A stretch of DNA of 64,000 nucleotides from positions 248,001-312,000 of the forward strand of contig NW_003314275.1 of the NCBI RefSeq assembly GCF_000143415.4, written 5' to 3'. This document shows positions 43,950-64,000 of the stretch, piece by piece. The notes below the pieces were generated by a model that worked only from the letters and a program-made list of their open reading frames with translations, made no database searches and was not told where the DNA came from. Numbering within the stretch: position 1 is the stretch's first letter; each line of letters opens with the position of its first letter. The position numbers were made by a program, and so were the translations under genes. Source of the stretch: Selaginella moellendorffii. Lineage: Eukaryota; Plantae; Lycopodiophyta.

Positions 43950-46540
43950 TGAGCGGCGAGCTGGTGTCGTGCTGAAAGCTCTCGAGATCGCTGCTGCCTT
44001 TTTTGCTTTTCGGGGGCTCGAAATTTTGCGGAGATCCGAGCAGTAGGAGAAAGAGAAGAACTTTTGCGCCGCGCCTAGAGCGCTTACCTGCGACAGCTGT
44101 GCTCGCTCATCTTCCCAAGAATGCAAAGTCACAAGAGGTGCTCTCCTGGGGGCACATTTTCATGTCTCCTCCCACCCTTCCAAACAAGTTTTTAGTTCTC
44201 CTCCTCGGCCTCCACTCGGGGTTGACATGGCTAAAAGCTGAAGAATATTGGATTAAAATAAAACTATCTTTTTTCTTCTTTCTTTTCTCTCAAGAAAGGT
44301 AGAGCAAAAGCTTGCAGTGGCCGTGAGCCACCAAACATACACACACATCAAATGCCCCTATCATTGCACGTGAAGAGAGGAAGCAATGCAAATCAATCAA
44401 GCCATCAATCAGTGAAGAACTACCTTGTGCTATGGGCTAAACTCAAGACTTTGGTTTGGTATTTTGTGGAGCTGTTCCATCCTTTGCTGTTGCATGCAAG
44501 CATCAATTGTGTGTTTGTGCACCCATAGCCTTCATAGACCAGCCAAGCTCTCGCAAGGACAAGAGGGTCTATCGCCACTTTTGCTGCGAATGCTGAGATG
44601 ATTGTAACTGGGACAATGGATGAAGTTGGGGAAAGGTTTTTTCTTTCACTTTCAGCTTTGCTTGCTTATCTTTCCCTTGAGAAATCAACTCCACTCCATG
44701 TGGTTGAGTGTTGGATCATGGAGGTTAAGACAAAGCCACATTTGCAGACAGCTTTCAAAATTTGCAATGAGCATGATGTCTCCCACATATGAGCAGTGAA
44801 GATCAGTGAGGTGAGGGATTCCCTGACCCTGCATGCATCTCTCAGCCCAGATGTTGCTGCTGCACAACAATATATCAAACATCAAGCTGCAGCTTTGGTT
44901 TGTTTGTATTGATTATTATTTGTAAACTTAAGTTAGTAGGCTTCAAAGGGCCAAGCAAAGCCACCAGAAAGCATCCCCAAAGTTACATTGCATTGTATAT
45001 GGAGACAAGAAATTTAGTTTGCAAACAAACAAAGTGTACAGCTTCCTCTGTACAGACAATTATTCCCCCCCTTTTTTCCCCTCTTTCTTCCTTTTATCTT
45101 TCTATTTCCTTGCATGGCAGCTCATTGCCTTGGCGCCTCTCTCTTCAATTTGGAAGCCCCTATACTGTAGAGTAGACATATAGGATCCCAGGGCGAAGAA
45201 CAGCGATCTTATACCGTGAAATATGTATCGACTTGATATGGCAGAGATTGCATCCAATTCCCTGTAAGCTGTGGTTGATGTGTCTTACATTGGAGCATCC
45301 ACATCAGCACCAGATGCACAGAGACAGACAGTGGCAACAGTCTTTTTGTGTGAAGGTGCAGCAGCGCCCTGTGCCTGTCTGCTGCTGCTGCTGCTCCTCT
45401 GATGAATAAGAGGGAGAAATTGCTTGCACCAACTACAAGAACAAAGAAACAAGAAAAACCACTCAAAGGCCAAATCTACAGCAGTTTTCTTTTCTTCACT
45501 ATTTATCTATCTTTGCTCCCAAAGTATTTAGGAGCCACTACTGTCCTTTAGTGAAGTTGCAGGGTCTTGATTGACTTGGAGAATAAGGTGAGATCACACC
45601 AAAGAAAAAACTCTGAACGAGCACCACATACGAACAAAAATGGGTTTCGCTTTCTAGTGCTATGTGCGGCCAAAGCGCATATCATATTATACTAATCAAA
45701 ACACTTTACATGTCTTCCTGGTATTCCTGGTAGACAAAGCAGCATTGTTGTGACCATGAAAACCGACACAAGCAGCATAAACTAATCCTTGTCGTCACCT
45801 TTATACATGGCTCGTCTCAAGCAATCTTTCCGTCACGTTCGCTCTATTGTGTGCTGGTGGACTTTGAGCAGGAAATTTAAGCTCCTCGCTAACAGCATCT
45901 CTAGAAACTTATACCTTATAGAACTTTGGGATGGGATGGCCTGGGATCTTCGTCTTCTTCTTCTTCTTCTTATTCTCCTTGGTTAGAGTAGCGGAGAAAA
46001 GTCCGCCGGGTCAAGAAAGTTACAGGCATCGCAGGATATTGATATTTTCCCAGACGTACGTATTGCATGCAAGCAATGGCCGACAAACCAGCTCTACGTA
46101 TTTAGAAAATGCACGTGGAATTTGAGGAGAAGAACAGTTTCCCCATTTAACTACTAGATGCCAATGTGTACTACTTTTCATCAATAAAAGTATATGTTTG
46201 CAACTCGCCAACTTTTGTTTTCGCTGCTAGGAATTTGGATTGGATAGGATTTCCTTGACGCAATCAAAAAGTCTGAGGAGTTTAAATTCTAAGTTTTATA
46301 AACACTTTGTATGATCTCTCTCTCTCTTCTTCCATGCACACCGACAGCCAGATTAGCTCCCATGGCAAGAAAGCCTCACTTCTCCTTGCACAAGCAAGAA
46401 AGGGAGGCTCTTCACACGCAGCTTGTGACCCCTTCCACGCCAAGAACATGTGCCACCAAATAAACAAATTCTTCATAGCACACAAAATGTATAGCTTTGA
46501 TTCGCAATCCATCCTCCAAGGACGATGATTTAAGCTTCCC

Positions 46541-47822
46541 CTCAGAGTCATGCGGGATTCCTGAGCGCCGTTACCACTGCCTTGACTTGCGTGTAGTTGT
46601 GGAGGACGTACTCGCCCTTCTCTCGTCCTTGCCCGCTCATCTTTGGACTTGATCCGCACGGATCCCAGTTGGCCGTGTCGATGTCCTTTGTGAAGGCACC
46701 GCACACCTCGGCCAAGACATACTTGGTGTTGTTCGTTCTCTCCGTGGCTTCTTGCACGGTCCTGCGATCAACGGAGCGCCAGAGTTTTAGACTTCTAGTT
46801 TGTAAAGTTACAACGTGCATACCTGAATTTTGTTACGAACTGGTCCAAAGATCTCGTCTCTTGATATCGCCCTGTTGGCCCACGCAACATCATGAATGGA
46901 AGAGCGTCTAGCCAATAAGCAGAGGCTCACCTTCACATCACTGAAACTTGATATACTATCCTTTGTTTCCGGGGCGGCAGCAGTGCTTCCTCTTGTCTTT
47001 AGCTCAGGTGATAGAAAAAGGAAGTTTAAGAAACAGACCTGAGGTTCCTGCTGTTCGATGGATTTCCAACAAGGCACGAGCCTTCGCTTTCTTAATGTAC
47101 TCGTCAACATGCTCTCAAGGAACAAACGCTCTTGATCTTGATCCCGCACAGCAACATTGTCCCCGAGTTGAGACTTGGAGCTATACTTATTTCAGATGTT
47201 AGGCAGAAAGCTTAGCTGATTGGACGAAGCAAAGCGAGAGACCTCCACCGCATGGTCAGTATTCATCATGATGGAAGGAAACTGTCCTTCAGGTTGCTTC
47301 AGGCTGCTGCTTGCAAATTACCAGTCTGCCAGTTTCAGTGAGCAACCTTCACGGGAGAAAAACAAACTTATAACGTAGTTGTCAAGCTTTAAAAGCTCTT
47401 ACCTTGTCTGTATCCACGCTGCAGACGGCGGTAAGAACTTCAGGTGGTAAAACAGCCTTTCTTCAAACAATAGCCATCCAAACAGAAATCCTCATTGCAA
47501 GTAGACAGGCAACAATTCGGCGGTTTTGAGGACGATGGTAAGCACTTTTCAGGCAAACGTCATGTGTCAGCCCGTCCTGTAAGTTATTACCATCAAGCAT
47601 TCATTCATTCAGATAGCTGCATAGTAGCGAAAGACACAATGAACTTTCCACCGTCTATTGCAAGTATTTCTCAGTAAGATCTTCGATCTTTCCTACGAGG
47701 TCAGGAACGAAAAACTTACATAAGCTGTGTTCAGGGACCTTGATCGAAATCTATTAACAGATTGAAAGAGTCTCACATGCACGAAAATGGTTACCTGATC
47801 TGGACGAAGCGGCCCAGCGGGA
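46541..47822 (-). pseudogene. Degenerate tandem copy of ALDH2B
   Basis: Aligns piecewise with 49766-51905, including intron sequence (e.g. [24 protein letters not shown]). It has many deletions and frameshifts. Confidence 0.9.
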
Positions 47823-48144
47823 AGCTGCTACTAATTCCTAGAACAGTCATATAGTAAAACTCACGTGTACCTGTGAAACGTTAGAAATTGAAAAAACACG
47901 AACCTTGTTCAGCTCAACAGGTTTCTGCGCTTTCCAATGAGCCTGTCTTCTGATTCATCCGAGTTTGTCATCCCCATTGGACAGACACAGACTTCGTCCG
48001 CCTGAAATCGAAATACTTTCGATGCTTTTCTGACTGAATATTTTCTTTCTGCTCACCTCCAGTCTCGTTCGCTTGCCATGCTTGGATGATTTCCTGTAAA
48101 GATTTTGAATCAGACAAGCAACTCGTGAGTAACTTCGAATTCTC

Positions 48145-49249
48145 TTACTTGTAGCTCCAGCTAAAGCAAAAGTGGGGAGAATCCGCTTGTCCATCTGAAA
48201 GCCTCTTGATGCTGTAGCAGATGAAAGCAGGCTTCTCGTTCAGTGATACTTCTCCCTTTGTCCACTTCACCGTTTTCATGTCTGAAATTCGGTCCCGGGG
48301 CCAGAAGGACAGAGAATCCACGTCGATCTTGAAGGAGCTATGATTGATGAGACCAAACACTACGCGCCACGATGGTGCTCCTTGTTCTCGGCACATCCTT
48401 GCCGTCATGGTCATCTCAACATCCAGAAGTTCCTCAGCCTCGTCGCTTGAGTTTGTTGCGGGAATTGCTCCTCTCTCAAAGAGAAGTGGTACAGTTTCTT
48501 CTCGTTCCTCCGCTGCTGGTGATGGTTCAACCTTGACGAGATTTTTTTGGGGAGGATTTGCATCCAGAGTCACAGAACTTGCATCCGATTCGGGCATGGA
48601 AAAGGTGATGGGGTGCAGGCACTCTTTGATATCAGCCATCAAGAGGTCTCGATCGAGGGACTGTAGATGCGCGTCATCCTTCCTAGAGATCCAAATCAGT
48701 CACAGAGAAAGCTCGAAGTTCACTTTGTTACCAGCTGCTGGCTATGTGCTGCATCAAAACGTTGTCGAGATCGTTTTCCACCTTGATCAGATGTGCTTCA
48801 TCTAGGAAGAAGAAAAAAAAAGCATATGAAAAACCATGGGAAGGTTTTTGCTTACCACGACCAGAAGTTCTGAGAAGATTGCAAAGAGTCCTCCTCAGAT
48901 CGATGAGCATCAACGCATCTGATTGTACGCACGATTCCTGGTCAGGAACGCTCTTGACGGCCTTGAGACCCCATATTACCCTGCCAAAATCTCTGCGATC
49001 GGTAAAATCTCCACCAGATCGAAGAGAAAGAAAGAGCAGACCTATCGCTGCATCTTGGGAAAGGATTCCTGTATGGCGCCGACCAGATGAGCTCCTGGAT
49101 GCTGGACAACAGCACGCGCCGATCAATCAGTGAGAACGCAATGGCGAGAAGACTTACAAGGAGAATTCTTGAGTGAGCGCTCCTTCCTTGGCGATGTTGA
49201 TCCCCGGCGTAGCACGGACAGAGCTCGGGCTGTCTTCCTCGAGCGCCAT
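48145..49249 (-). CDS. Hypothetical spliced gene of unknown function
   Basis: ATG at 49249 and GC-rich open exons separated by GT-AG short introns (~49170, ~48850, ~48720). No recognisable domain. Confidence 0.4.
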
Positions 49250-49766
49250 ATGACCCTTTTAGGGCAACTTCCCGCCATTTTCCTGTTAAATGTAAGTGTT
49301 TTGTTTGGATTTAAACTTTAAATTTTAAAATAGTATTTATTTTTAAACAATAATTTTAATAAATATAAAAATAATCCAGAAAAATAATAACAAAAATAAA
49401 AAATTTAGTATTTAGCATTAACTACGATAAAAACACAAAATCTTTAAATATAACAATTAATTTTCTAATAAATAAGATTAAAATTTATTAATTCCATTGT
49501 AAGTTTTTGCTATTAAATAGATAATTAATATTAAATAAAAACCAAAATTTAAATTTTTAGATATTATGGTAATTTATTTCATTAAAATTTTGAAACTACA
49601 TATTTTAGTCTTTTAAAAGTTTATAAATGGAAAAAAAAAACTTATCCTATTGTTTTTAAGTACCATAATCATTCCTTGATTATATTAATAGTGTCATTTC
49701 TAAATTAAACTAACTACTGCTTGATGCTCCGAATATTTTTTGTTCTAACGATCGATATTTCAAGCT

Positions 49767-51951
49767 TCAGAGCCATGCGGGATTCTTGAGCGGCGTTACC
49801 ACTGCCTTGACTTGCGTGTAGTTGTGCAGCACGTACTCGCCCTTCTCTCGTCCTTGCCCGCTCATCTTATAGCCGCCAAAGGGAATCGCCGCATCAAACA
49901 CGTCGTAGCAATTGATCCACACAGATCCCACTCGCAGTGCACGGCTGAACGTGTTGGCCGTGTCGATGTCCTTTGTGAACACTCCCGCGGCCAAGCCATA
50001 CGGCGAGTTGTTCGCTCTCTCGATGGCTTCTTGCACGGTCCTGAAGCGCCCGACTTTTAGTTCGTGAAGCTACACTACTTCCTACGTTCATACCTGAACT
50101 TTGTCACGGCCTGGACGGGGCCAAAGATCTCGTCTCTCGATATCGCCATGTCGTCCTGATGATCATGGATGAGGGAGCGTCTAGCCAAGGACAGAAAATA
50201 AGCAGAGGCTCACCTTCACATCACTGAAGATTGTTGGCTGGATGTAGTATCCTTTGTTTCCGATACGAGCGCCGCCAGTGACCAGATTTGCTCCCTCATG
50301 TCTTCCTACGTCAATGTAGCTCAGGATCTTCTCAAACTGAGCTTTGTCAACCTGATAAAGAAGATACAAGCGAAAGTTAGAACTCGCTATCGAAACCAAA
50401 CAGACCTGAGGCCCTTGCTCCACCCCGCTCTTGAATGGATCGCCAACAACGCGCTTCAATGCACGAGCTTTCGCCTTCTCAATGTACTCGTCATAAATGC
50501 TCTCGTGAACGAACGTTCTTGATCCCGCACAGCAGCATTGTCCCTGAGTTGAAACTTGGAGCTAAAGCCTGTTTCGTATCAAGCAGAGGAAACTTACCTG
50601 GTTGAAGAACAAAGCAAAGTGAGAGAGCTCCACAGCTTGGTCAATATCCGCATCCGGCATGATGATGAAAGGAGACTTTCCGCCCAATTCCAAAGTAACT
50701 GGCTTCAAGTTGCTTCTAGCGGCTGCTTGCATTACGAGCTTGCCGGTCTCAGTAGAACCAGTGAAAGCAACCTTCACGCAAGAAAAACAGATTACTACGT
50801 ACCCTTCAAGCTTAACCAGCTCTCACCTTGTCTATGTCCATGTGGCTCGAGATTGCGGCACCTGCAGTTTCCCCAAAGCCCGAAACGACGTTAAGAACTC
50901 CCGGTGGTAAGCCAGCCTTTCAAGGAACAGCCATTGATATGAAGAAACAAAAAGAAGAGAATCTCCAAGAGCTCATGACGAGTACCTCGACTGCAAGTTT
51001 TGCTGCGAGACAGGCCGAGAGCGGTGTCTGTTCGGCGGTCTTGAGGACGATGGTATTGCCACAGGCGAGAGCAGGAGCCACTTTCCAGGCAAACATCACC
51101 ATGGGAAAGTTCCACGGAATGATCTGGCCGACTACACCGATTGGCTCGTGAAATGTAAGCACCTGATGTGGTCCGTCAGCCGGCAGTGTTTTACCATGGA
51201 TTTTATCCGCCCATCCTGTCAAGATCGAGAGTTTTAACCACCAAGCATTCATCGGGAAAAGCTTTCTCTACCTGCATAGTAGCGAAAGAGCCTCGTCACA
51301 AAGTGAGGAATCTCAACTCCTTGCGACTGCGAGTAAAGCTTTCCACTGTCCAAAGAATCCAGCGTTGCAAGCTCATCGTTGTGCTTCTCAAGGAGGTCGG
51401 CATACTTCAGCAAGATCTTCGATCTTTCCTACGATACGATGTCATAGTAAGGGAAAAAAGGTTCAAAGCCAACCATTCTCTGCAAACAAGGGAACGAGGA
51501 ACTTACATAAGCCGTCATTCTTGGCCAGGGACCGTGATCAAAAGCCTTGCGAGCAGCTTTCACAGCCCGATTGATATCTTCCACGTCCGCCTTGGCAACA
51601 TCGGCAAGGACTTCCTCGGTTCGAGGATCCACAGTCGGGAATGTCTCGCCTGGACAAGCTCCGATTGAGTCTCTTTGCAGAAAAGAAAAACAGAGAGGAA
51701 GACTTACCAGAGGCAGCGTCCACAAACTCCCCATCGATAAAGAGTTTAGAATGCTGGACTTCATACGATGGCTTCACGGGTGCTTCCACCGCAGCTACGG
51801 CAAAGCTCCGGATCGCGCCTCCTCGACCCAAATTCACATGCACAAAAGCTCTTTCCTCTAGGTTCCTCGAGTTACCTGATCTCGACGAGAGACGGCCGAG
51901 CGGGATGGATCCAAGGCGAGTGAAGCTGGAGACGATAGCGCGAGACGCCAT
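49767..51951 (-). CDS. ALDH2B: Mitochondrial aldehyde dehydrogenase family 2B, multi-exon
   Basis: Mitochondrial-type presequence, [51 protein letters not shown] and PFGGYKMSG. Confidence 0.96.
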
Positions 51952-52293
51952 AGCTGCCGAGGATGGGCTGCTAATAACCCCTACTCGCTACTGGATGGGA
52001 TAAACATACTTCATACGGGTCCAAAAATGCGGCCTTTATTATGGGCCGTTGGATGGCCTCGCCGTTCACGAGGGTGGACCACAGTTAGAATAAGACCGTG
52101 ATTTTGGGATCAAAGATCATTCAATTATAAATAGCTCAAACTATTAGATATTACATAGCAAGAAATAATCATCAAAGCTTAGTTGCATGTACTCCAAAAG
52201 GGCCATGGTACTTTGAGAATCGTCCGCCATCCTTACGTGGAAAGGTAACGCCGTGTATATAAGGGCAATGTTGGGGAAGGGTAAACCCTGGCA

Positions 52294-53356
52294 ATGGAGC
52301 TGAGGTTGAGGCCTGAGCAGCGGGAATGGTGCCGCCAAGCGTGTGTCCCTCTCAAGAACAAGGCAGCCCAGCAAGCCAAGAACGAATACCGTAAGCCTTT
52401 GGATTATAATGAGAACTCTTATCGATCGTTCTTCCTTTCCAGAGCGGCTCGTCACCGCCCATGCTAATGAAATGCTCCATGTTTCCACGAGTGATCACCC
52501 ATATTGCCGCAGCGCCACCAGGGTGGTGCTGCAAGGCAGCTCCGAGTTTGTCAACGCGAATTTCATCACTCCGAATGCCATCTGCGGGGGAGAACCAGAT
52601 TCACCCCTCCATTTCTGGGAGATGGTCGTGCAGTGCAAATGCCGAGCAGTCGTCAAGCTCACACAGGCACGTCCCAGTTTCATATCGTATAGTTTAAACT
52701 GAGAACTTTGCGCAGGACATGGCTAGCGAATACTTCCCACTGAGAACAGGAGAATCGCAGGTGTATGGTAGAATCACAGTAACGAACCGGGGCTTCTCGC
52801 GCAGCAGCAACGAAGTCACGAAACGAATCCTCGAAGTGGAATGCCAAGGCTATCAGCCTTTCACGCTTGAGCATTTCCAATACTCGTGGTCAGACTTTGG
52901 CGTCCCCAAAAGGATAGAACCGATTCAAGAGATGTTTGCTGCTCTCTACAGGCTCCCTTCAGACTGCTCCTTCTTTGTCCATTGCAGGTTGGACTTCTTC
53001 CTTCCTTTTGCTTTTTTCCTTTTTCTTACAAGAGTGACTTTTTGACAGGGCTGGGATTGGCCGTGCTGGAACCTTTATCACAATCGATCACGTACTGAGA
53101 TGCATTCTTGGTGGAAATCTTAGCGTGGTGAATATTTCCGAGACTGTGGCTCGTCTAAGAGAACAGCGGCGTGGATTGGTCGAGACACATGTAAGTTTGA
53201 CTTTGCTTTAGCAGCTCTTGTTTAAATTTCATGCTGGTGCAGGACCAATACTGGTTTTGTTTCAAAGCAGTCATCAAGGAACTCGAACTATTGATGTTCT
53301 CGGCGCAGCCCAAAAATCAAGAGTTTCATGCCAGCGCCAGGAAACTCGAAGTTTAG
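52294..53356 (+). CDS. Divergent classical protein tyrosine phosphatase (PTP1-like), multi-exon
   Basis: PTP1-like N-terminus, TRVVL..FVNANFI, FWEMVVQ, WSDFGVP, FVHCR|AGIGRAGT and QRRGLVET..QYWFCF. Confidence 0.82.
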
Positions 53357-53557
53357 CTATGAGAAAATCGTGTCTGGTTGGAGGCCAAAGAGTTTTCGGA
53401 TAACTTCGCGTTCTCGAGCATCTAGCTTTGTCTCCAGAAGACGATCCAATTCTTCTCGAGAATCATCAAAATGAGAACTTTTGTTAAGAACAGCTTGAAA
53501 GTAAGTTAAGCTTGCATCCCTTTCGAGCTAAATAAAGAGAGAGAAAGCAAAGTTGCA

Positions 53558-54811
53558 TCAGACCCATGCTTCAACCATGCTCCTGGTTTGGATTTTAAGC
53601 TCGCCGTCTCCAAACGCAGCACTTGGATCCCACCTCCAACTCTTAGAGCTTAATTCATAGCTCATCAGCAGCTTAGATACCCACACCGTATTAACCCCGT
53701 CGGTGCAGCATAGAAACCAGCCATCGCGATCGGCACGCTGTTGCTCCTGCATAGATAGCATCTCACTCTCGAGCACCAAGTCAACCTCCAGCGTCTCACT
53801 ATCCTGCACCACAGATCTGTGCCTGATCCCGCACACTTGCGTCCCCGCCCCGGATTTCCTCGTTCACAATCAGCAGCTGCCCTCCGCAGTGCACTGGCTT
53901 GGCTGTCTGCGAAGAAGCGGCGCCGCCATTAAGCCACCAGTACGACCACGAGTCCTCTTCGCACGCGGTAGCTGCTCAGTCGAACGAATACGACACGCCC
54001 CCGCCACCTTTCTCCCACGCAAAATATCGATCTACGCAGAGTTGAGGGATGCAGCTGCTTCTCGCGGCCCACGAGTCCTCTTCGCACGCGGTAGCTGCTC
54101 AGTCGAACGAATACGACACGCCCCCGCCACCTTTCTCCCACGCAAAATATCGATCTACGCAGAGTTGAGGGATGCAGCTGCTTCTCGCGGCCCACGAGTC
54201 GGTTGTGGAATCATAGATCCAGGCGGTGAGCTGAAGCAACCAGAGTGCAAGGAAAACCAAGCTTGAAAGCTTGGTTTTGAAATCATTTACGCAGGTTTCG
54301 ATGAGAGCATGGACTTGGGTGTAGCGACCCGACAGTGGATTGGCAACCAGGTAGCGTGAGCTGCAGCAGCCATACGAGAAGCAGAACAAGATCGGTCCAG
54401 GACGTGGAGCAACACAATACTCGAGGTTGTAGTCTTGCGGGCAGCAGCCATGGAGCGGGAGCAGCGAGAACTTGGTGCTCATGGGAGGCCCGTGCGCGAT
54501 CGCCAGCGGGGGCGTTCGGAGCTGATTAGAGGAGTCGCAGAGACAAATGCCAGAGTGGTGGTGACATGGTCGCGGTGCCTAGCGAGAAGCTCCGGGCTGC
54601 TCAGCCTGGCATTCCAGGCCCTCGACACCATCCTGGCGTTCATGAGCGAGGGCGCGGGCAGCCGGAGAAGAATGTCGTCCTCGAGGAAGGCCGGGAGGAG
54701 GCCATGAAACAGTAATGCCAGATGGAGCTCATCTTCCTCATGGTGGTGATCTCGGCTGTCGTCTCCATGGGGTGCTTGCAAGGAGGCAGCTCCTCCAGTG
54801 TTTGATCCCAT
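53558..54811 (-). pseudogene. F-box protein, disrupted
   Basis: F-box motif LPAFLEDDILLRLPAPSLMNARMVSRAWN and FBA/kelch-like YLVANPLSG and WIYDSTTDSW. The frame is broken at ~54480 and has in-frame stops. Confidence 0.75.
53946..54200. repeat. Perfect 123-bp tandem duplication
   Basis: The unit starts CCACGAGTC at 53946 and 54069, with a third CCACGAGTC at 54192. Confidence 0.95.
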
Positions 54812-54949
54812 ACCTGTTGCTCGCCCGCCACATCACATGACCACGCGCGCGCCTGCTCAAAGCTGCTGTCGCCCCGCTTCTTGGCCTCCTCCTCCTTCCC
54901 AATTCCTCAGCCATGGCACAAAATCGGATAGCCGATCGCATTGACTTGA

Positions 54950-56215
54950 CCTGTTTGTAATGGCTTGGTCTACCATCTGGATACCGAACGAGCACCAAGG
55001 CATAGCCCTTGGGGCTGAGCAGTCCTCGCTTATCTTGTCGCCGCTTCTATGGATCACTCTGGAATGCAGCAGCACAAACTTGCCATTGGCCAGCTCCACA
55101 ACTGCTTTGTGCCGTGGAAGGTCTTCTCCTCGGATGACCGCTGCGCCGCCACCAAAGGTGGATCAAATTGACACCATACTTTGGACCTTTGTTGGGATGC
55201 CTGAAAAAACAGATTGTTTTTTCTTGAAGTTTCTCTTTTCGTCAACTTACGGGTGGATTGAGATACGTAGTTGGAGGGGAACCACTCTACCATTGCCGAG
55301 TATGCGCGGTTCCTCTGGATCATCAAAAAGCCAACTTTGCTGCATAGCTTCTTCTTTGCAGACTTCGTTGGCAGCGCCTTGCAAGGCTCGTGCTCGTACA
55401 AATCCTCCAACATAAATCTGGAGAAGCCACGATAGAGATTCCGTGTCTCTAGATCCTCTTTGATGTCTCTTGTGATAGACGACACATCGCTTCCAAACAA
55501 GCACATGAGAGCTCTCCGGGCAGTCTCCGCATTCGAAGTTAGCAACGTTTTGACTGGATGCTCCAAATTGTGTTTGAAGATTGACAACTTTTCAACCATG
55601 TCGAAAAGTCATCCAGTCGATAGAAACTGATCAAGCCTGGATACAAATTATGTGCCATCTCTCGGAACATCTCTCCATAGGTGTCAACGGTTGCATCAGA
55701 GCCAACTACATCAAATAGCTGACAACTCCAAAAACCAAGTTGTACAAGGAATTGCATTTGAGAAAATCTTTCCCAGGTCGGAGAAGACATGACCGTCGGA
55801 AACTATGTTGTAGTGCACGCCCGGAGGATACACAGCCTCAACATGCTCCGCAATGATCTTCATGGAATGTATGGCTAGTTCTTCCGCTTTGTCCGGGAAC
55901 TTTCCTAGAGTTTTGTCCAGGTTGCACGACTTGACAGGGAAAGCTGCCAGGATGAACTCGAGAGAAATGTCACAGGAGATGTGGTACTCGACTTGATCTG
56001 AAAACTTTCCGAACCACTGGTCGTGTTTTGGAAAGTTGATGTAGTTTCGTTTGATGATTCCAACAACTTTGTTAGATCCTCCACCTCTTGACGAGTGTAC
56101 CTCATGAAAGGTTCCACAAGACAATCTCTTGTCTTTATGCTCTTGTCCAAGATAATTTATTTCGCCTCCCAAGCTGCTAGGACTCTTCCATTTTTGATAA
56201 ATTTCTTGTAAATGG
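54950..56215 (-). pseudogene. Isocyanide synthase (PvcA/Dit1, PF05141 family) homolog with introns, frameshifted
   Basis: FILAAFPVKS.N..KTLGKFPDKAEELA, YPPG...IVSDGHVFSDL, LYRGFSRFMLEDL, MIQRNRAYS, LRISIHPH...PKYGVNL and DGRPSHY. Introns at 55706-55772 (donor GA instead of GT) and 55201-55250. At least three frameshifts. Confidence 0.85.
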
Positions 56216-57029
56216 AGGAGTTTAATTCCGTCCCTTAGTTTAGTGTATAATTCTGAGAGTTTATTATAGTGTATAATACGGTCAAGTAAAATTTAATTTG
56301 GAATTTTCACTATACTTTACAAATTAAAATATATATTATAATTATTTTTTTGGAATTACCTCAAATTTCCCCTTTTCTTCCCTCCCTTGAGAGTGTTCTT
56401 TTTTCTTCAGCTTGATAAAAGAAGAAAAAAAAGAAAAAGTTGAATCATAAAGACATTCATTCTTTGTTGTTATGATTAGAATACTTTATATCAACTTAGC
56501 AAAAATACGAGAACTATTAATTAAATTACACATTGATCACTAAACAATAAATTGCTACGTGTTGCATGTAGCAACACTTGGTTTGCTTAATACTAGTGTT
56601 ATTATGACATATTAATCCAATTGATCAAATAAAGTTTATAATTATAAGCATGTTTGTAATTTATATATACAAGATTAATTTTATTGCATATCAAGATGGT
56701 AGAATAAAAAAGAATATACTAGAAAAGGTTTAAGGAAGTTTATAAATTATAAATACAAGATTAATCTAAATGAATAACAACCGTTAGATGGTAGAATATC
56801 CTAGAATATTCAAGTATATTCTAGGTATATCCACTACCATCCCAGTCCCCTATAGGTTTGCTTAAGCAAACCAAAAATAACAATTATATTTATAAATTAC
56901 CAATAGATAAATAAACATATAAATTTTATTCTAAGTATATTCTTAACTATTCAAAGAAGCTCTCACTTTGCTCCTCGGCAACTCTTTGCTTGCTGGTATA
57001 ATTCCACACCGGATTCATGTTCCTCTATT

Positions 57030-57490
57030 GTGGATTTTTGGATGGTGCCCCTATCCCGGCAATAGTCGGCACTTACTGTGTCTCGCCTTTTGGAAGTCTG
57101 AGCGACCACATTCCATCGCGCTTCACTGTTCGCCCAACTTCAAGCGGCCGAAACCATTCTTCTCTTTGAATCGCCTCAAAATCTGAGGTAATCCAAACGA
57201 ACATGAAACATAGAAGAGAAAAAGGAGCCCGTGATCAATCAATTTACCTTCAGTGCGAGATCACACTCGTTTTGGCGTTCCAATTCCTTGAAAACTTCCA
57301 AAGAACTTGCTTGAGCAATCGACCACCTGCTTAGCCTACCTGCGCTGGCACCCTCCTTGCTCAGAGGGCTCGTCACTGTCTCTCGCACAAGTGACTTCCT
57401 GCATCCCGAGCAATCAGCATATCCCTCCTTGTATCGTCCATCGCCCCGCAGCGCCACAGGCGACGAGGGCAACCGAACACAGCTAGAACC
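57030..57490 (-). pseudogene. Degenerate partial copy of the THA8-like gene
   Basis: LPSSPVALRGDG, RKSLVRETVTSPLSKEG and EVFKELERQNECDLALK match 59.5-60.05 kb, with deletions. Confidence 0.85.
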
Positions 57491-58180
57491 GTAAACCAAT
57501 GAATAAAAGTTGAAACTACAAACCATCGAGTCCAAGGGAAAGAATGGCAGTAGAGAGCATGCAAGAAGCACCAAAATCTTCATCCAAAATCACGATTCCT
57601 GAGCTCAACCCACTTTGATTTTGGATCTATGCATCTTGTAATGGTGCAGGCAATTCGAACAGGCATTTCCAGAGCAAATGTGTGTAACCAAGCTCAGGGT
57701 GAAGGCAGGTGAGGTCGTTTTTCTTCTTTCCCCCCTCTAGTTCCCACATTGGCAATGCATGCACTTGGATATAGCTGGAGAGTCAGTTGGAGGTGTATAA
57801 GTATCCAGAGAGGAGGAAGAAGATGTCTTCACACTCAAGACGTCTCTGATATTTGGAGCACGATTGATGAAATTTGAGTGATGCTAGGGCCTTTCAAAGA
57901 CTTCTCTCGCTTCTCTCAAATGCCGTTAGCATTGCGGTCCAAACAACGTTTAGTTTGAGCTTGCATTCTTACTCAAATCTTTTTATCTTTCCACGTAAAA
58001 TCAGGGATCAGCTTTCTTAAATTTCCAGTGTTTTGAGAGATCGGTTGTGCGCTACAACCAATGGTGGCGCTGGGTGACCACGGCAAGGTGTAATTAATTG
58101 CTTTCGTGATCAGAATAAACTTTCCCTTAAAAGGGAGCGAGAGTATTTATTTACTCTCCACTTAAGAATCTTAGGGTATT

Positions 58181-58663
58181 ATGAAAGGCTCGGGTTCTGG
58201 CAACGCTGGCTGCCAAGCTCCGCACACATGCTCGCTGGAGAAGCTTTGCAAATCAGGATTTATCAGCGTGAAGGCTAGGATGGGAGAAAAGATTGTCCGC
58301 TTCAGCGTGCATCACAGCAGTCTCAACTATGGTCTCCTCAGGACGGAGGTGAGCAGCAGGCTCCGCATGGCCAACTTCACCATCAGCTACTGCGACAAGG
58401 ATCAGGACTGGGTGAGTCTGACTAGAGACTCCGAATTGTGGGACTGCCTCTGTGTGGCAGATAAAAACTCCACTTGTGTTAAGTTGCGGATCGAGAATCC
58501 ACTGGTGCCGCCTGATGTAATACATGCAGCGCAACTCTTTGGGACTGGGGTCCTGCTTTGCGGCGGGCTTGCAGCAGCGGTGTGCTGCATATTTGAGCAC
58601 CCCATAACTGCTCTTCCTCTGTGTTGTTTGGGGGCGATTCTGTTAGGCTTTACTGAACCATAG
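58181..58663 (+). CDS. Small PB1-domain protein with C-terminal hydrophobic segments
   Basis: ISVKARMGEKIVRF...ISYCDKDQDWVSLTRDSELWDC (PB1 with K and OPCA motif), followed by two hydrophobic stretches. Confidence 0.72.
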   Translation: MKGSGSGNAGCQAPHTCSLEKLCKSGFISVKARMGEKIVRFSVHHSSLNYGLLRTEVSSRLRMANFTISYCDKDQDWVSLTRDSELWDCLCVADKNSTCVKLRIENPLVPPDVIHAAQLFGTGVLLCGGLAAAVCCIFEHPITALPLCCLGAILLGFTEP

Positions 58664-58980
58664 GTTTTTGGATTCTTATCGTTCTCTTTATTAAATTTAA
58701 TGGATATATTTATCTTTTACATGGCGACCACAACACCTTCAGTATCTTGCTGCTTCCAGCAGCTCCAATTGGTTTGCTCGGCCTTCTTCTCATATTCCAG
58801 GTCCGTGTTAGTTCTTTCTCTTAGCATTGCACTCAAGTAATTGAGCACGCCTCGGTCGGGGTAAGCGTGCAAGTAGCTACCTGGTAAGTACAGGATCGCG
58901 AGTGCTACCAAGATCTCCAGCTTTATCCCCATGATTGGGGCGATTTTTCCCAGATCGGCGCCTCCACCAAATAACCTGTT

Positions 58981-58984
<4 letters not shown>

Positions 58985-59016
<32 letters not shown>
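58985..59016. repeat. (TG)n microsatellite
   Basis: Directly visible. Confidence 0.95.
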
Positions 59017-59019
<3 letters not shown>

Positions 59020-59254
59020 TGTTTTTCTTTTTTCTCCTTTTTTTTTTGAGCTTGGTAATTCACCTGTAAAGAGGCTGAGGAGTTGGTCATTGCTGATGGT
59101 ACCCGGGAAAGATCACCACCTTTTGTGAGTATGTGCTCTAGATTGGAGCAATTAGAAAAGTTGCATTTAGTTGGCATGTGGCTGGATAAGAGCTTCTTGA
59201 ATACCTCTCAAACCATCAGTAGTAGTATTCATAAATTTTTTTAAGACAAGCAAT

Positions 59255-60043
59255 TTAAGTTCTACAAATCTTTGGGAAGGCTTGACCAAGATCTTCTTCC
59301 ACAGCAGCAGCAAGCTCAATCTTCCCACAACCTTGGAGCTCTCGAATGACGAGCCCGTATGTTTTCTCGTTGAGCTGCAACTTCATCCCCTTTGCTTGCT
59401 CGTACAGCTCCATGGCTGCCACCGGATTGCCGTGCTTGAGGTGAGCCACCATCAGTTCCCTGTGGAGAAAGAAATCCGGCTCCATTCCATCGCGCTTCAC
59501 TTGCTCGTAAACGTAGACCATGTCGTCCACTCGGTTGTTCTCCCACATCACTCCAAACATCCGGCGGTAGAGCCGAAAGTCGGGCTTGAACCATTCTTCT
59601 CTTCGAATCGCCTCGAAAATCTGTGCGGTGACCCATGAAACACCGAAGAGAATAAAAAAAGAGCGCGATCACTTTACCTTCAATGCGAGATCACACTCGT
59701 TTTGGCGCTCTAGTTCCTTCAAAACTTCCAAAAGATCTCGCTTGAGCAATCGACACACCTGTGTAGCGAAAACTCTCCGCAGCTCCTCCTGATCGTTCTT
59801 GGCGCCCTTGAGCGCTTGCACGACGGTAATGCCCTCCTTGCTCAGAGGGCTCCCGCTCGTCACCGTCTCTCGCACAAGTGACTTCCTGCCTCCCCGAGCA
59901 ATCAGCAAATCCCCCCTTTGGGCGATCTCAATTGCCACAAATGCAGACGACCGGAACCTCACCCCTATCGCGCAGCACTGCTCCGGCAGCTTTCCATCTC
60001 CTCGCAGCGCCACAGGCGACGAGGGCAATCCAACGCTTCCCAT
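59255..60043 (-). CDS. THA8/THA8-like short PPR protein, 2 exons
   Basis: LSKEGITVVQALK, RLLKRDLLEVLKELERQNECDLALK|IFEAIRREEWFKPD, followed by PPR-like repeats. Confidence 0.88.
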
Positions 60044-60314
60044 GAGCTAGAACCCTAGCGAATGTAAAATCGCATATCCTTTCAACGGTCTATCATTGAC
60101 GATTGTCAACGGTCAACACTTACTTTTGAGTCAAACACGTTGACCTTTGGAGGCGTCAAACCATCTAAAGCGAACGAATGGCAGCTAGAAACACTAGAAA
60201 AATCTCATTTTTATTAGATGGAGAGTAGAGAGCATGCAAGAAGCACCAAAATCCTCATGCAACATCGTCAGTTCCTCAAGCTCACCATTCTGGTTGTGGA
60301 TCTATAGCGATCGA

Positions 60315-61466
60315 TCAGTACTTGTAATCCTTGACGTGCAAGCTCTCCGACGCCCCCTCGGCGCTCTCGGTCTCGCCCGAGTACTTGCCCAGCGTCGCGT
60401 CCGAGTTGGCCTTGGCACGAACCAGGAAAACCTTCTGCGCCGCCTCCACATTCTCCTTCTTGCCACCCCACGTCTTGAGCGTGCTCTGCTGGAGCGCCCG
60501 CCCGAACGAGAAGGACAGCGTCCACGGCTTGAGGATGTCCAGCTTGTTCATCGCGTCCAGATTCTTGGTCGCCTCCACCTCGCTCTGGCCGCCGGACAAG
60601 AACATGATCCCGGGCACCGCCGCCGGGACCGTCCTCCGGAGCGCCAGCACCGTCGCCTCGGCAATCTCCTGCGCGCTCACCTTGGGCGCCTCGGATCCGT
60701 GCGTCACCATGTTGGGCTTGAGCAGCGTCCCCTCGAGCAGGACGTGGTGGTCGCTCAGCGCCTTGTACACCGCGGCCAGCACCACCTCCGTCACCTTGGC
60801 ACACGTCTTGAGGTCGTGGGGTCCGTCCACCAGGATCTCGGGCTCCACGATGGGGACGAGGCCGTTCTCCTGGCAGATCATGGCGTAGCGCGCCAGCCCC
60901 TGCGCGTTCTCCTGGATCCCCAGCTCCGACGGCTGCGAGGGTCCGATGTTTAGCACCGCCCTCCACTTGGCGAACCGGGCACCGGCCTTGTAGTACTCGG
61001 CGCAGCGTCCCGCGAGGCCGTCCAGCCCCTGGGTCGTGGTCTCACCATTGGTACCGGCGATGGGCACCGTCCCCTTGTCCACCTTGATGCCCGGGAGGAC
61101 GCCGTTCTCCAGCAGCACGTCCACGAACGGCTTGCCCGCCGCGGTCTTCTGGTAGAGCGTCTCCTCGAAGAGGATGACGCCGCTCAGGTACTGGAGAGCG
61201 CCCGGGGCGGTGAAGAGGAGCTCGCGCAGCGCCTGCCGGTTGGATTCCACATTCTCGACCTTGATGCTGGCCAGGCGCTTGCCGATTGTGCCCGTGCTCT
61301 CGTCCGCCGCGAGGATGCCCTTGCCCGGGGTCGCAATGTACTTGGCATTCTTGATGAGCTCGTCTGTGGGGAACCCAAATCGAGAGAGGGAGAGCTCAGA
61401 TCCACAGGCTTAACACTCGCGCTAGCTATGGCGCTTACCTGCGTACTTGCCGACGACGGCCGCCAT
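60315..61466 (-). CDS. FBA: Cytosolic class I fructose-bisphosphate aldolase, 2 exons
   Basis: GKYA|[54 protein letters not shown] and [10 protein letters not shown]. Intron at ~61366-61438. Confidence 0.97.
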
Positions 61467-61709
61467 AGCCTCGCGCTCGCCTTTTTGCCGGAGATAGTAA
61501 AATCCCTAGGCCTTATCCCCACAAAAAAGACAATGCATGAAAATCCAGGGTGCCAGCGCAGCCCTAAATAGGGCTTTCATGGAGTCCACGCTGGCAGAAG
61601 CGATGGTTAGTATTGATTTGGGGCTATTTCGATGACCAGTCCATGTGCATGGAATTAATTTACGCTTTTACATTGACAGGTAGAAGTGGACGTGTGGTTA
61701 AGCGACGTT

Positions 61710-62310
61710 TGAACTGTTTCTGTTTGATAGGGCACCAGCAAAATCCTTCGTCCTTCGTTTGTTTGTCACGCACCAGATGCCCATTGTCGGCATTTGGAGC
61801 AAACATATAATTCGCCACCATTTTGATGGCCTAAACCCTGTTATGAAGTGCTTTGCTGACTTAAAGATCATTCTCACTAATTAATTCGAGGAAGCCTATC
61901 TTCCAGAAGGCAATGGCCTCGCACCTTCCATCTTATACACTCGATAAACTGCGCTTTTAAAAAGGATAGGGTTTGTCGTTTCTTAATGGCTTTTGCTTTC
62001 ATCATCGACGTATGAACTGTTTCTTCATAGGTCACCGGCAAAATCCTTCGTTTTTTTGTCAGCATTTGGAGCAAACATATAATTCGCCACCCATTTTGAG
62101 CTTGATGACGGCCCAAAGAAGTATTGCTGACAGTTCTTTGCTGACTTAAGCTCGGTTTCACTAATTAATTCGACGAAGTTTATCTTCAAGAAGGCAAGGG
62201 CCGCGCACCTTCCACCCGATGAAACTGCACTTTTAAAAAGGATAGAGTTCGTCGTTTCTTGGGCCATGGATCATGCGATCACGCCCAGAGGCTTTGCTTT
62301 CTTCATCGTT
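61710..62310. repeat. Diverged ~300-bp tandem duplication upstream of aldolase
   Basis: Shared blocks GCAAAATCCTTCG, GCATTTGGAGCAAACATATAATTCGCCACC, CACTAATTAATTCGA and TTTTAAAAAGGATAG recur ~300 bp apart. Confidence 0.85.
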
Positions 62311-64000
62311 TCGCGGGAAAACAAAGTTAAGCCCCATCTTCCAGAAGGGTTTAGTGGACAGACTTGCAGCCCCTAGATGCCCAAACAGTGCAACTCTAAA
62401 TGCTACAATTCATAGCGCGCAATCGTTTACCACGGAGCTGTTCGAATCGGAATTTGCGGTGAGGTCCCCAAAGAACAAAACCATGATCATACCACTGAGG
62501 GAAACACGGCATCACTCGGTGAGCACTCCGTGGAGGCCCTCCTGATTTGTGCCATGAGGAAAAGAGGATCGAAAGAGAGGAAGAAAGTAACAAAAACGTG
62601 CTCGGCACTGCAATTTGACGAGAGCCTTTCGAGCGAGTGGTGGGCACAAAGCTGATCTTTACGGCGCGCCAAGAGGGGGTTCTAGCGCATCGACGATGCA
62701 CAGATCCAAAAACCTCGGGTTGCTGTCATCTCAGCAATTGGAGAGCCTGCAAGAGAGAGCGAAACAAATAATTTGGCTTGACTGCTACAGCGCGCAAAGA
62801 GTTGCGAGTCCGGCAGAGGAGACAAAGCTCCAAACAGTGGGGTCAACACAAGGCGCTAAAAAGCATCCCGATCAACAGATCACGGGCGACCGGACACGTC
62901 TGGCCACACACTGTAGAGCGAAGCGACCCGGCTCTGGCGCGCTTCGCAGAAGAGGATTAGTTTTTGTACGGTTTCCGAGAGGAGCTTCTTGTCTGGATAT
63001 GTGTTTCGGGCCTGATCATGGTGTGTCTGATTCGATGAGATTGGGATTCGAATTGGATCCTTATGACGAGCGCTCCAAACAAAGCCCACAAAAGAGATGG
63101 ATCCATCCAGCCATGGACAACGCACAATTGTGATCTCGCACTGCTCCTTGCGCGTCCCGCCACTCGCGGTGGAGGACAAAGCGAAAAAAAAAAAAAGGAG
63201 CGCCAAATCAGGACACGAATCGATCATGTTTGCTAGCCAAAGACCGAATTCGCGAGCTTTGTTCCGGGTTTCCAGACACTGGAAATCATAGCGCCCAGCA
63301 AAATAATTCACACACCCAGAAGAGATTTGGCCGAGTCAAATGATCCCACAACATGATACACCGGGCCCCCCCATTGTCCGCCAACTTGACGCGGGGAATA
63401 TCCCCTGCAAGCCGGAGGAGAATATGCTCCACAGTGCCACGAATATTCGCCTCGAGATTCCCCCCTCGTTGGTCGGTGTTTTCCAATAAGGGAGGAAGAG
63501 ATCTCTCCTCTCCCGGTATTTAAATCCACGCGCTGGAGCGTTGGGATTTAGGTATCGCTCGCCCTTTGGTCTTCGCTACTTTCTTCTTCCCCGTGAAAGA
63601 TTTTCTTCGTTCGCTCGCTGGACTTCTTCTCCCATTTTCTCTACCCGTTTTGACAGATTGGAATCCAGAAGGCTGCAAGGCCGTGTTTTTCCGCGTCTCC
63701 GCTGCTCCATCCTCATAGACAACGTGTGAATCGCGCGGCTTCTCGCGCCCTTCCTCAAGCGCATTCGCCGCCCTTCCTCCCCAATTTCCTCCCTGCCGAG
63801 CTCGTCGCGCCACCAGACTCGGTCACGATCTAGTTGCTTGCTCGCATCCTTAAAAACCAGCGCTCCTCTTTCCTTCTCTCCACTCGCAGAGAGGAAATTT
63901 GGGCCGCGAAGAGCGCGAGCGAGGGGTCTATCACACACCGTTAGAGATCGAACGACTTCCAAACGATCGAAGTTTCTTAGATCGGTCGACGTGATTCGCC

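What the first reader, a model, noticed from the sequence alone, without database searches (positions are those of the whole stretch)
54950..56215. Isocyanide synthase (PvcA/Dit1) homolog with plant-sized spliceosomal introns
Seen: a full run of ICS family motifs (AFPxKS, PDxAEELA, SDGHVFSDL, YRGF..F..EDL, RISIHPH, GRPSHY) with 50- and 67-nt introns, located among ordinary plant genes. Known: this family makes isonitriles from amino acids in bacteria (PvcA, IsnA) and fungi (Dit1, XanB, CrmA) and is not a standard land-plant enzyme. Inference: this is a horizontally acquired, intron-bearing gene family. This copy is dead, but an intact paralog would imply isocyanide natural-product chemistry in an early-diverging vascular plant.
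Basis: partly seen in the sequence, partly recalled or inferred. Interest (0 to 1): 0.8.

Follow-up and report, generated by a model that had tools for sequence, protein, structure and literature searches.

The report
Dead fungal-type isocyanide synthase gene, Selaginella
This is a decayed, non-functional copy of a fungal Dit1-type isocyanide synthase gene in the spikemoss Selaginella moellendorffii; the family is already on record in that plant, and this copy matters mainly because it still keeps two intron positions shared with chytrid fungal genes, which points to a fungal donor.

Summary
On the minus strand at about 54948-56234 lies a PF05141 (DIT1/PvcA) homolog.

The window is 100% identical to S. 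moellendorffii scaffold GL377579.1. The locus is already annotated there as SELMODRAFT_410977 and listed in Table S1 of Lim et al. 2018.

The copy is an unprocessed pseudogene:
- About 70 N-terminal codons are missing.
- It has one in-frame stop and six frame-breaking deletions; one of 13 nt removes the TPWH motif.
- The donor of the first intron is mutated (GT to GA) and the normal stop is lost.

The colinear second-haplotype copy shares three of the frameshifts. It differs from the window equally at all three codon positions, which indicates neutral decay.

Intact paralogs exist (six protein clusters, named DIT1 by NCBI). Four are intronless and two keep one intron.

Both inserts in the window sit at the exact position and phase of introns in chytrid DIT1 genes. 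The family forms one clade (100/100), and its nearest named relatives are fungi. No other plant appeared among the named hits.

The scan had already noted a dead copy with two fungal intron positions on other DNA of this genome.

The parts
54948..56234 (-). Body of the Dit1-type isocyanide synthase pseudogene. It is homologous to residues ~71-517 of the intact paralogs.
   Evidence: Pfam PF05141 on three pieces; frameshift-aware alignment to P0003; N-terminal tblastn
56246..56870 (.). AT-rich (25% GC) repeat standing where the first ~70 codons and the start codon should be. This is the 5' truncation.
   Evidence: No N-terminal homology upstream; GC content; very high contig depth at 56487-56700; internal repeats
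56157..56159 (-). In-frame stop codon in the N-terminal extension, between AAWEAK and IILDKSIKTRDC
   Evidence: also present in the allele L002
56069..56076 (-). Frame-breaking deletion (net 4 nt) between QEVEDLT and VVGIIKRNY. Shared with the second haplotype.
55706..55772 (-). Intron 1: 67 nt, phase 1, in the codon after SDGHVFSDL. The donor here reads GA instead of GT.
   Evidence: Same site carries GT..AG introns in paralogs P0159 and P0160, the allele, three chytrids and Colletotrichum. The 2024 runs read GT at 55771.
55567..55568 (-). 1-nt deletion causing a frameshift (SSNT / LEHPV). Private to this haplotype.
   Evidence: The allele and the contigs of runs X1, X2 and X4 carry an extra base here; one X3 contig is identical to the window.
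55275..55275 (-). 1-nt deletion in a C run (VEW-FP/QLRISIHP), next to a lost Leu codon. Shared with the second haplotype.
55201..55250 (-). Intron 2: 50 nt, phase 2, inside the Pro codon of RISIHP|H, with GTAAGT...TTTTTTCAG ends
   Evidence: Same site and phase in Phlyctochytrium and Powellomyces genes. Absent from six intact plant paralogs.
55157..55157 (-). 4-nt deletion causing a frameshift (NLIH / LVAAQ). Shared with the second haplotype.
55113..55113 (-). 13-nt deletion that removes the (I/T)PTPW part of the conserved TPWH motif and shifts the frame. Private to this haplotype.
   Evidence: The allele still reads FHTPTPWHNAVVE. TPWH is present in 166 of 209 fetched homologs.
55018..55024 (-). 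Frameshift with loss of several codons, just before the C-terminal GRPSHYKQV block
   Evidence: No contig covered 55029-55109, so this lesion is not independently checked.
54948..54974 (-). C-terminal GRPSHYKQV block. The stop that follows within three codons in the intact paralog is missing, and the frame runs on.

Best explanation
This is an unprocessed pseudogene, retaining its introns, of the Dit1-type isocyanide synthase family of Selaginella moellendorffii. It makes no enzyme. It was a working gene for most of its history, as shown by a strong excess of third-codon-position differences against its paralogs. It then lost its 5' end and picked up frameshifts. Since the two haplotypes split it has drifted neutrally, and each haplotype has added lesions of its own.

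The family as a whole was most likely taken up as genomic DNA from a chytrid-like fungus. This lineage keeps two of the four chytrid intron positions. Other plant paralogs keep one or none.

Intact family members would be expected to convert the amino group of tyrosine (or tryptophan) into an isonitrile or N-formyl group, as PvcA, IsnA and yeast Dit1 are described to do. That chemistry is inferred from the family and was not tested.
For: Identity of the locus: the window is 100% identical to GL377579.1 of GCA_000143415.2 over 17.9 kb.

Family membership: PF05141 hits on three pieces.

Lesions: six frameshifts, one stop, the 5' truncation and the lost stop codon were mapped against intact paralog P0003.

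Neutral decay: the colinear copy on GL377602.1 shares three frameshifts and has private ones. Substitutions between the two copies are 12/344, 11/343 and 12/344 at codon positions 1, 2 and 3, and 16/397 outside codons.

Earlier constraint: against the intact paralogs the differences are about 0.20, 0.11 and 0.50 at positions 1, 2 and 3.

Intact paralogs: P0003, P0156-P0160, named DIT1 by NCBI. Their gene structures were read from the loci.

Introns: intron positions and phases match those of Phlyctochytrium, Powellomyces, Geranomyces and Colletotrichum genes.

Tree: the Selaginella sequences plus both window pieces form a clade at 100/100. They fall on the chytrid side of a 99/99 split from the Ascomycota.

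Distribution: all named hits outside S. moellendorffii are fungal.
Against: No RNA data could be laid on the locus, so silence is not shown.

Only contigs were available, not raw reads. The lesion near 55024 and the GT-to-GA donor change have no independent support. The 2024 runs carry an extra base at 55567/55568 and GT at the donor, so two lesions are polymorphic or private to the reference haplotype.

The sister group of the plant clade is unresolved, and the tree root rests on one very long outgroup branch.

Absence from other plants rests on named hits only.
Confidence: 0.9

Rival explanations
1. The locus is a working gene with unusual splicing, as the public models SELMODRAFT_410977 (555 aa) and SELMODRAFT_418146 (536 aa) imply.
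For: Both models exist in GenBank and UniProt and carry PF05141 hits.
Against: The models skip or mistranslate large parts of the domain. P0161 keeps profile positions 1-75 plus one fragment, and both models run on into the neighbouring F-box gene. Substitutions between the two haplotype copies show no codon-position bias. The two copies carry different frame-breaking lesions. Lim et al. dropped this entry for having more than 50% gaps.
Confidence: 0.03
2. The sequence is fungal contamination or a misassembly, not plant DNA.
For: The closest relatives outside the species are fungi.
Against: The locus lies inside a 2.76-Mb scaffold. A second 1.7-Mb scaffold carries it in the same gene order: aldolase, PPR, ICS, phosphatase, two ALDH genes. 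Contigs from a separate 2024 study match parts of it at 98% or more. At least six further paralog clusters sit on other large scaffolds.
Confidence: 0.01
3. The family is an ancient eukaryotic gene inherited vertically and lost from nearly all other plants, rather than a transfer from a fungus.
For: Introns shared with fungi are also what common descent would leave. The sister group of the plant clade is unresolved.
Against: No other plant or alga appears among the named hits of two very large searches. Lim et al. report the family in eukaryotes as fungi plus sporadic oomycetes, one amoebozoan and 'one species of moss'. Vertical descent would need very many independent losses.
Confidence: 0.07
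4. The family came from a bacterium (PvcA/IsnA type) and acquired its introns inside the plant.
For: PF05141 is common in bacteria. The solved relatives are bacterial: 3E59 PvcA and the 9DH4/9DHM isonitrile synthases.
Against: The plant proteins are about 500-520 aa and carry the long N-terminal extension of fungal Dit1; solved bacterial forms are 315-330 aa. Both introns fall on fungal intron sites in the same phase. The one clearly short-form sequence sits on a very long branch away from the plant clade.
Confidence: 0.02

Closest known systems
Intact S. moellendorffii paralogs annotated 'spore wall maturation protein DIT1' (e.g. XP_002967756.2 = P0003; also P0156-P0160)
   Same: Same family and same clade (100/100). 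Amino-acid identity is 68-75% over aligned codons. The N-terminal extension and all domain motifs match. Intron 1 is at the same site as in P0159 and P0160.
   Different: The window copy is truncated and frameshifted and lacks TPWH. It also keeps a second intron that none of the six intact clusters has.
Chytrid DIT1 homologs (Phlyctochytrium KAI9105237.1, Powellomyces hirtus, Geranomyces spp.)
   Same: They are the best-scoring named relatives outside the species. Both window introns match chytrid intron sites in position and phase.
   Different: Amino-acid identity is only 40-53% on the pieces. The chytrid genes have two further introns that are absent here. They have OPT-transporter or AMP-binding/NRPS-like genes as neighbours rather than plant genes.
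Yeast Dit1 and the fungal ICSs IcsA, XanB and CrmA (Lim et al. 2018, PMC5974471)
   Same: Same PF05141 domain, and a single-domain architecture like Dit1 and IcsA. Dit1 is described as converting tyrosine towards N-formyl tyrosine, with an isocyanide intermediate proposed.
   Different: No Dit2-type P450 lies beside this locus. The Ascomycota sequences form a separate 99/99 clade. This copy is dead.
Bacterial PvcA (PDB 3E59) and Tyr/Trp isonitrile synthases (9DH4, 9DHM, 9DHN)
   Same: Homologous catalytic domain; P0003 matches them at E 2e-29 to 3e-24.
   Different: The bacterial proteins are 315-330 aa without the N-terminal extension, and bacterial genes have no spliceosomal introns.

Membership tests
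PF05141 DIT1_PvcA (isocyanide synthase family) | Significant match to the family profile | tested here: met
   89.9 and 71 bits on two pieces against a cut-off of 26.4 bits; a third piece at E 0.008. Together they cover profile positions 1-215.
PF05141 DIT1_PvcA (isocyanide synthase family) | Uninterrupted open reading frame across the domain (a functional member) | tested here: not met
   Six frameshifts, one stop, a 5' truncation and a lost stop codon.
PF05141 DIT1_PvcA (isocyanide synthase family) | Conserved TPWH motif in the C-terminal part | tested here: not met
   A 13-nt deletion at 55113 removes it. The allele keeps it. It is present in 166 of 209 fetched homologs.
PF05141 DIT1_PvcA (isocyanide synthase family) | Isonitrile-forming activity on an amino acid with ribulose-5-phosphate | not testable with these tools
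   Needs enzyme assays on an intact paralog. This copy cannot encode the enzyme.
Fungal Dit1-type long form | N-terminal extension of about 150-180 aa before the PF05141 domain | tested here: met
   Homology to the extension of the plant paralogs from about residue 71 onward. The first ~70 codons are missing.
Fungal dit1/dit2 gene cluster | Adjacent Dit2-type cytochrome P450 | tested here: not met
   Called neighbours are NUDIX, aldolase, PPR, phosphatase and ALDH genes, with no P450.
Unprocessed (intron-retaining) pseudogene | Retains introns at ancestral sites, so it is not a retrocopy | tested here: met
   Two inserts lie at conserved intron sites with an intron-like GT/GA start and AG end.
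Unprocessed (intron-retaining) pseudogene | Neutral substitution pattern | tested here: met
   Equal substitution rates at the three codon positions between the two haplotype copies.

The most novel reading that the evidence does not exclude
This dead locus may be the surviving relic of the earliest gene structure of the fungus-to-spikemoss transfer. Among the gene structures examined here it is the only S. moellendorffii lineage, as two colinear copies, still carrying both chytrid-type introns. That would show the gene arrived as genomic DNA from a Phlyctochytrium/Powellomyces-like chytrid. It would also give an ordered series of intron loss (2, then 1, then 0) during the family's expansion in the plant.
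Probability: 0.35. Interest if true: 0.5.

Novelty: already known. Interest (0 to 1): 0.3.

Why it matters
This copy does nothing for the plant's chemistry. Its value is as evidence of the family's history. Two intron sites shared in exact position and phase with fungal genes argue that a eukaryotic, fungal donor supplied genomic DNA. They argue against a bacterial origin and against contamination.

The wider point stands: a spikemoss holds a sizeable family of intact Dit1-type isocyanide synthases with unknown products. That point is already visible in RefSeq names and in a 2018 supplementary table, and this scan has reported it several times on other pieces of this genome.

Tried and rejected
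- The word-indexed protein search with the 193-aa piece found only one distant 299-aa protein. The tool's length limit hid the ~520-aa relatives. The exhaustive search then found them.
- I first placed the middle frameshift near 55605 by eye. The frameshift-aware alignment moved it to 55567/55568.
- I looked for the missing N-terminal codons upstream to 58500 and across the whole window. Nothing credible turned up.
- I looked for a second copy in the window and found none.
- The sequences I picked as a short-form (PvcA-length) outgroup mostly fell inside the Ascomycota, so they are probably fragments. Only P0001 served as an outgroup, on a very long branch, so the root is weak.
- Paper searches pairing Selaginella with isocyanide synthase, Dit1, isocyanide or dityrosine gave nothing relevant. 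A broad search with min_terms 1 was wasted.
- Reads: only Logan contigs were available. They are short, and many come from the other haplotype or from paralogs, so they check only some of the lesions.
- ORFs on both sides of the locus showed an F-box domain downstream (Pfam) and, by eye on the translations, PPR-like and what looks like a PB1-type sequence upstream, with no P450.

Full report
**Observation.** The feature is real and lies on the minus strand. A regular-expression pass gave their coordinates:
- AFPVKS 55927-55944
- PDKAEELA 55873-55896
- SDGHVFSDL 55774-55800
- YRGFSRFMLEDL 55399-55434
- RISIHP 55250-55267
- GRPSHY 54957-54974

The motifs are spread over three frames. Pfam PF05141 (DIT1_PvcA) matches three stop-free pieces, in order along the profile: positions 1-75 at 89.9 bits, 77-110 at E 0.008, and 117-215 at 71 bits, against a cut-off of 26.4 bits. 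There is only one copy in the window.

**Whose DNA it is.** The exhaustive protein search with the first piece gave 804 hits. The best three are Selaginella moellendorffii entries. The public model P0161 (SELMODRAFT_410977) led to scaffold GL377579.1 of GCA_000143415.2. That scaffold is 100% identical to window 46099-64000 over 17,902 bases. Called neighbours there are ubiquitin, NUDIX, aldolase, PPR, the ICS model, a tyrosine phosphatase and aldehyde dehydrogenases. An F-box domain lies directly downstream at 54479-54811.

A second scaffold, GL377602.1, carries a colinear copy (model SELMODRAFT_418146, P0002). It is 94-98.5% identical in the flanks and 92% identical across the gene. I take it to be the other haplotype of the two-haplotype reference assembly. 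That is inference from colinearity; a recent segmental duplicate would look the same.

**Lesion map.** I aligned the intact paralog P0003 (XP_002967756.2, 520 aa) to the minus strand with a frameshift-aware dynamic programme. Homology runs from P0003 residue 123 at 56156 to residue 517 at 54948. Weaker similarity to the paralogs' residues ~71-82 reaches 56219-56234. The lesions are:
- an in-frame stop at 56157-56159;
- frame-breaking deletions at 56069, 55567/8 (1 nt), 55275 (1 nt in a C run), 55157 (4 nt), 55113 (13 nt) and about 55024;
- several in-frame deletions;
- no stop codon after HYKQV, where the paralog ends three codons later.

The 13-nt deletion removes the (I/T)PTPW part of the TPWH motif, which 166 of 209 fetched homologs carry. 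The first ~70 codons and any start codon are absent. In their place stands a 25% GC repeat at 56246-56870, which has very high contig depth in public runs.

**The second copy and the test for neutrality.** The same alignment on the GL377602.1 copy shows the frameshifts at the sites matching 56069, 55275 and 55157, and the stop. These lesions therefore predate the split of the two copies. That copy lacks the 55567/8 and 55113 deletions, so it still reads FHTPTPWHNAVVE, and it has private frameshifts of its own.

Substitutions between the two copies are 12/344, 11/343 and 12/344 at codon positions 1, 2 and 3, and 16/397 outside aligned codons. This shows no coding constraint. Against the intact paralogs, by contrast, the differences are about 0.20, 0.11 and 0.50 at positions 1, 2 and 3. 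That is close to what intact pairs show against each other (0.14-0.20, 0.11-0.14, 0.39-0.42). So the lineage is an old paralog that was under purifying selection for most of its history and died late.

**Reads.** No RNA run was listed as holding the stretch. Only Logan contigs could be laid.
- One 611-nt contig of run X3 is identical to 55103-55713. It covers the lesions at 55567/8, 55275 and 55157, intron 2 and, close to its end, 55113. It may come from the same source as the assembly.
- Contigs from a 2024 study (X1, X2, X4) match 55569-55821 with four substitutions and no gaps. They read GT rather than GA at the intron 1 donor (place 55771).
- The same contigs carry an extra base at 55567/55568.
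- The donor mutation and that 1-nt deletion are therefore private to the reference haplotype, or polymorphic.
- Nothing covered 55029-55109.

**Introns.** Removing the 67-nt stretch 55706-55772 joins ...GAC CTG G to TT GGC..., which reads SDL-V-G. Removing the 50-nt stretch 55201-55250 (GTAAGT...TTTTTTCAG) joins ...CAC CC to G CAT..., which reads IHP-H.

Among the intact paralogs, P0003, P0156, P0157 and P0158 are intronless: gene span equals coding length. P0159 and P0160 each have one GT..AG intron, of 57 and 55 nt, at exactly the first site and in phase 1. The allele has GT..AG introns at both sites, 67 and 65 nt long.

I mapped the introns of four fungal homologs onto their own loci:
- Phlyctochytrium and Powellomyces have four introns of 60-72 nt. 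The second is in phase 1 in the codon after SDGHVFSDL. The fourth is in phase 2 inside the Pro codon of SIHP|H.
- Geranomyces keeps the first site.
- The ascomycete Colletotrichum truncatum also has the SDL-site intron, plus the chytrids' third intron.

Both window inserts are therefore introns inherited from a fungal-type gene, not plant novelties. If introns landed uniformly, two exact coincidences with four sites in about 1.5 kb would have a chance of order 1e-5. That figure is my estimate.

**Phylogeny and distribution.** A search with P0003 returned six intact S. moellendorffii clusters, which NCBI mostly names 'spore wall maturation protein DIT1', and four broken models. After those come chytrids (Blyttiomyces, Zopfochytrium, Powellomyces, Geranomyces) and many Ascomycota. 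No other plant appears among the named hits.

In a careful IQ-TREE analysis of 47 rows, the seven plant proteins and the two window pieces form one clade at 100/100. The pieces were entered separately and never joined. The Ascomycota form another clade at 99/99. The chytrids lie on the plant side of that split, but the sister group is unresolved, and the root depends on one very long branch. Within the plant clade the window pieces fall outside the intronless group (98/99).

**What is known.** Lim et al. 2018 (PMC5974471) state that ICS proteins in eukaryotes occur in fungi and sporadically in oomycetes, one amoebozoan and 'one species of moss'. Their supplementary table lists S. moellendorffii entries, including SELMODRAFT_410977, which is this locus. 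[quoted passage not shown] Solved relatives of the intact paralog are bacterial isonitrile synthases (9DH4, 9DHM, 9DHN) and PvcA (3E59). Searches of the held literature found no paper on the function of the plant genes.

Earlier notes of this scan describe the family on other pieces of this genome. One of them (s1-351358) describes a dead copy with two fungal intron positions, possibly the GL377602.1 copy. I reached the same points from my own tool results.

**Mechanism.**
- Shown: this locus cannot encode an isocyanide synthase.
- Inferred from the family: intact paralogs would condense the amino group of tyrosine or tryptophan with a sugar-phosphate carbon to give an isonitrile. Where that is hydrated the product is an N-formyl amino acid, as proposed for yeast Dit1 in spore-wall dityrosine synthesis.
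- Not known: whether the plant uses this in spore walls, metal binding or defence.

All searches used single pieces by reference.

**Verdict.** The locus and the family are already on public record, so this is a pseudogene of modest interest. Its retained fungal introns are its one notable property.

Noticed in passing
window 54099-54811 (-) and public models P0161 / P0002: An F-box gene (PF00646, E 9.5e-5) lies directly downstream of the pseudogene. Both public gene models fuse the ICS remnants with it, so the database entries SELMODRAFT_410977 and SELMODRAFT_418146 are chimeric mis-annotations.
   Followed up: partly
window 53870-54200: A tandem duplication of about 120 nt. The same ~40-aa stretch (RGPRVLFARGSCSVERIRHAPATFLPRKISIYAELRDAAAS) appears twice in one ORF, and mirrored ORFs lie on the other strand.
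   Followed up: no
window 56246-56870: An AT-rich (25% GC) element with internal direct and inverted repeats. Contig depth in public runs is 1e4-1e5 at 56487-56700, so it is a high-copy repeat, possibly a non-autonomous transposon. A 326-nt part (56548-56873) is missing from the other haplotype.
   Followed up: partly
L001:4187-5133, next to intact paralog P0003 at L001:6001-7563: The intact DIT1 paralog on GL377574.1 sits beside a FabA/ApeI-like dehydratase gene, a BAHD-type transferase and a DUF455 gene. This looked to me like an unusual neighbourhood for a plant and could be a small metabolic cluster.
   Followed up: no
L006:324-2143 (-) and L006:3001-4497 (+); L007 and L008: Intact paralogs occur as local duplicates. 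There is a divergent pair on GL377587.1, and two identical 521-aa genes 14 kb apart on GL377593.1.
   Followed up: no
L011 and L012 (chytrid loci): In both Powellomyces and Geranomyces the DIT1 homolog lies next to an OPT oligopeptide transporter gene. In Geranomyces and Phlyctochytrium an AMP-binding or NRPS-like gene is nearby. This suggests a conserved chytrid gene cluster.
   Followed up: no
window 46099-49400 and 49404-51900: Two aldehyde dehydrogenase genes lie in tandem downstream of a tyrosine-phosphatase gene. The order is conserved on both haplotype scaffolds.
   Followed up: no
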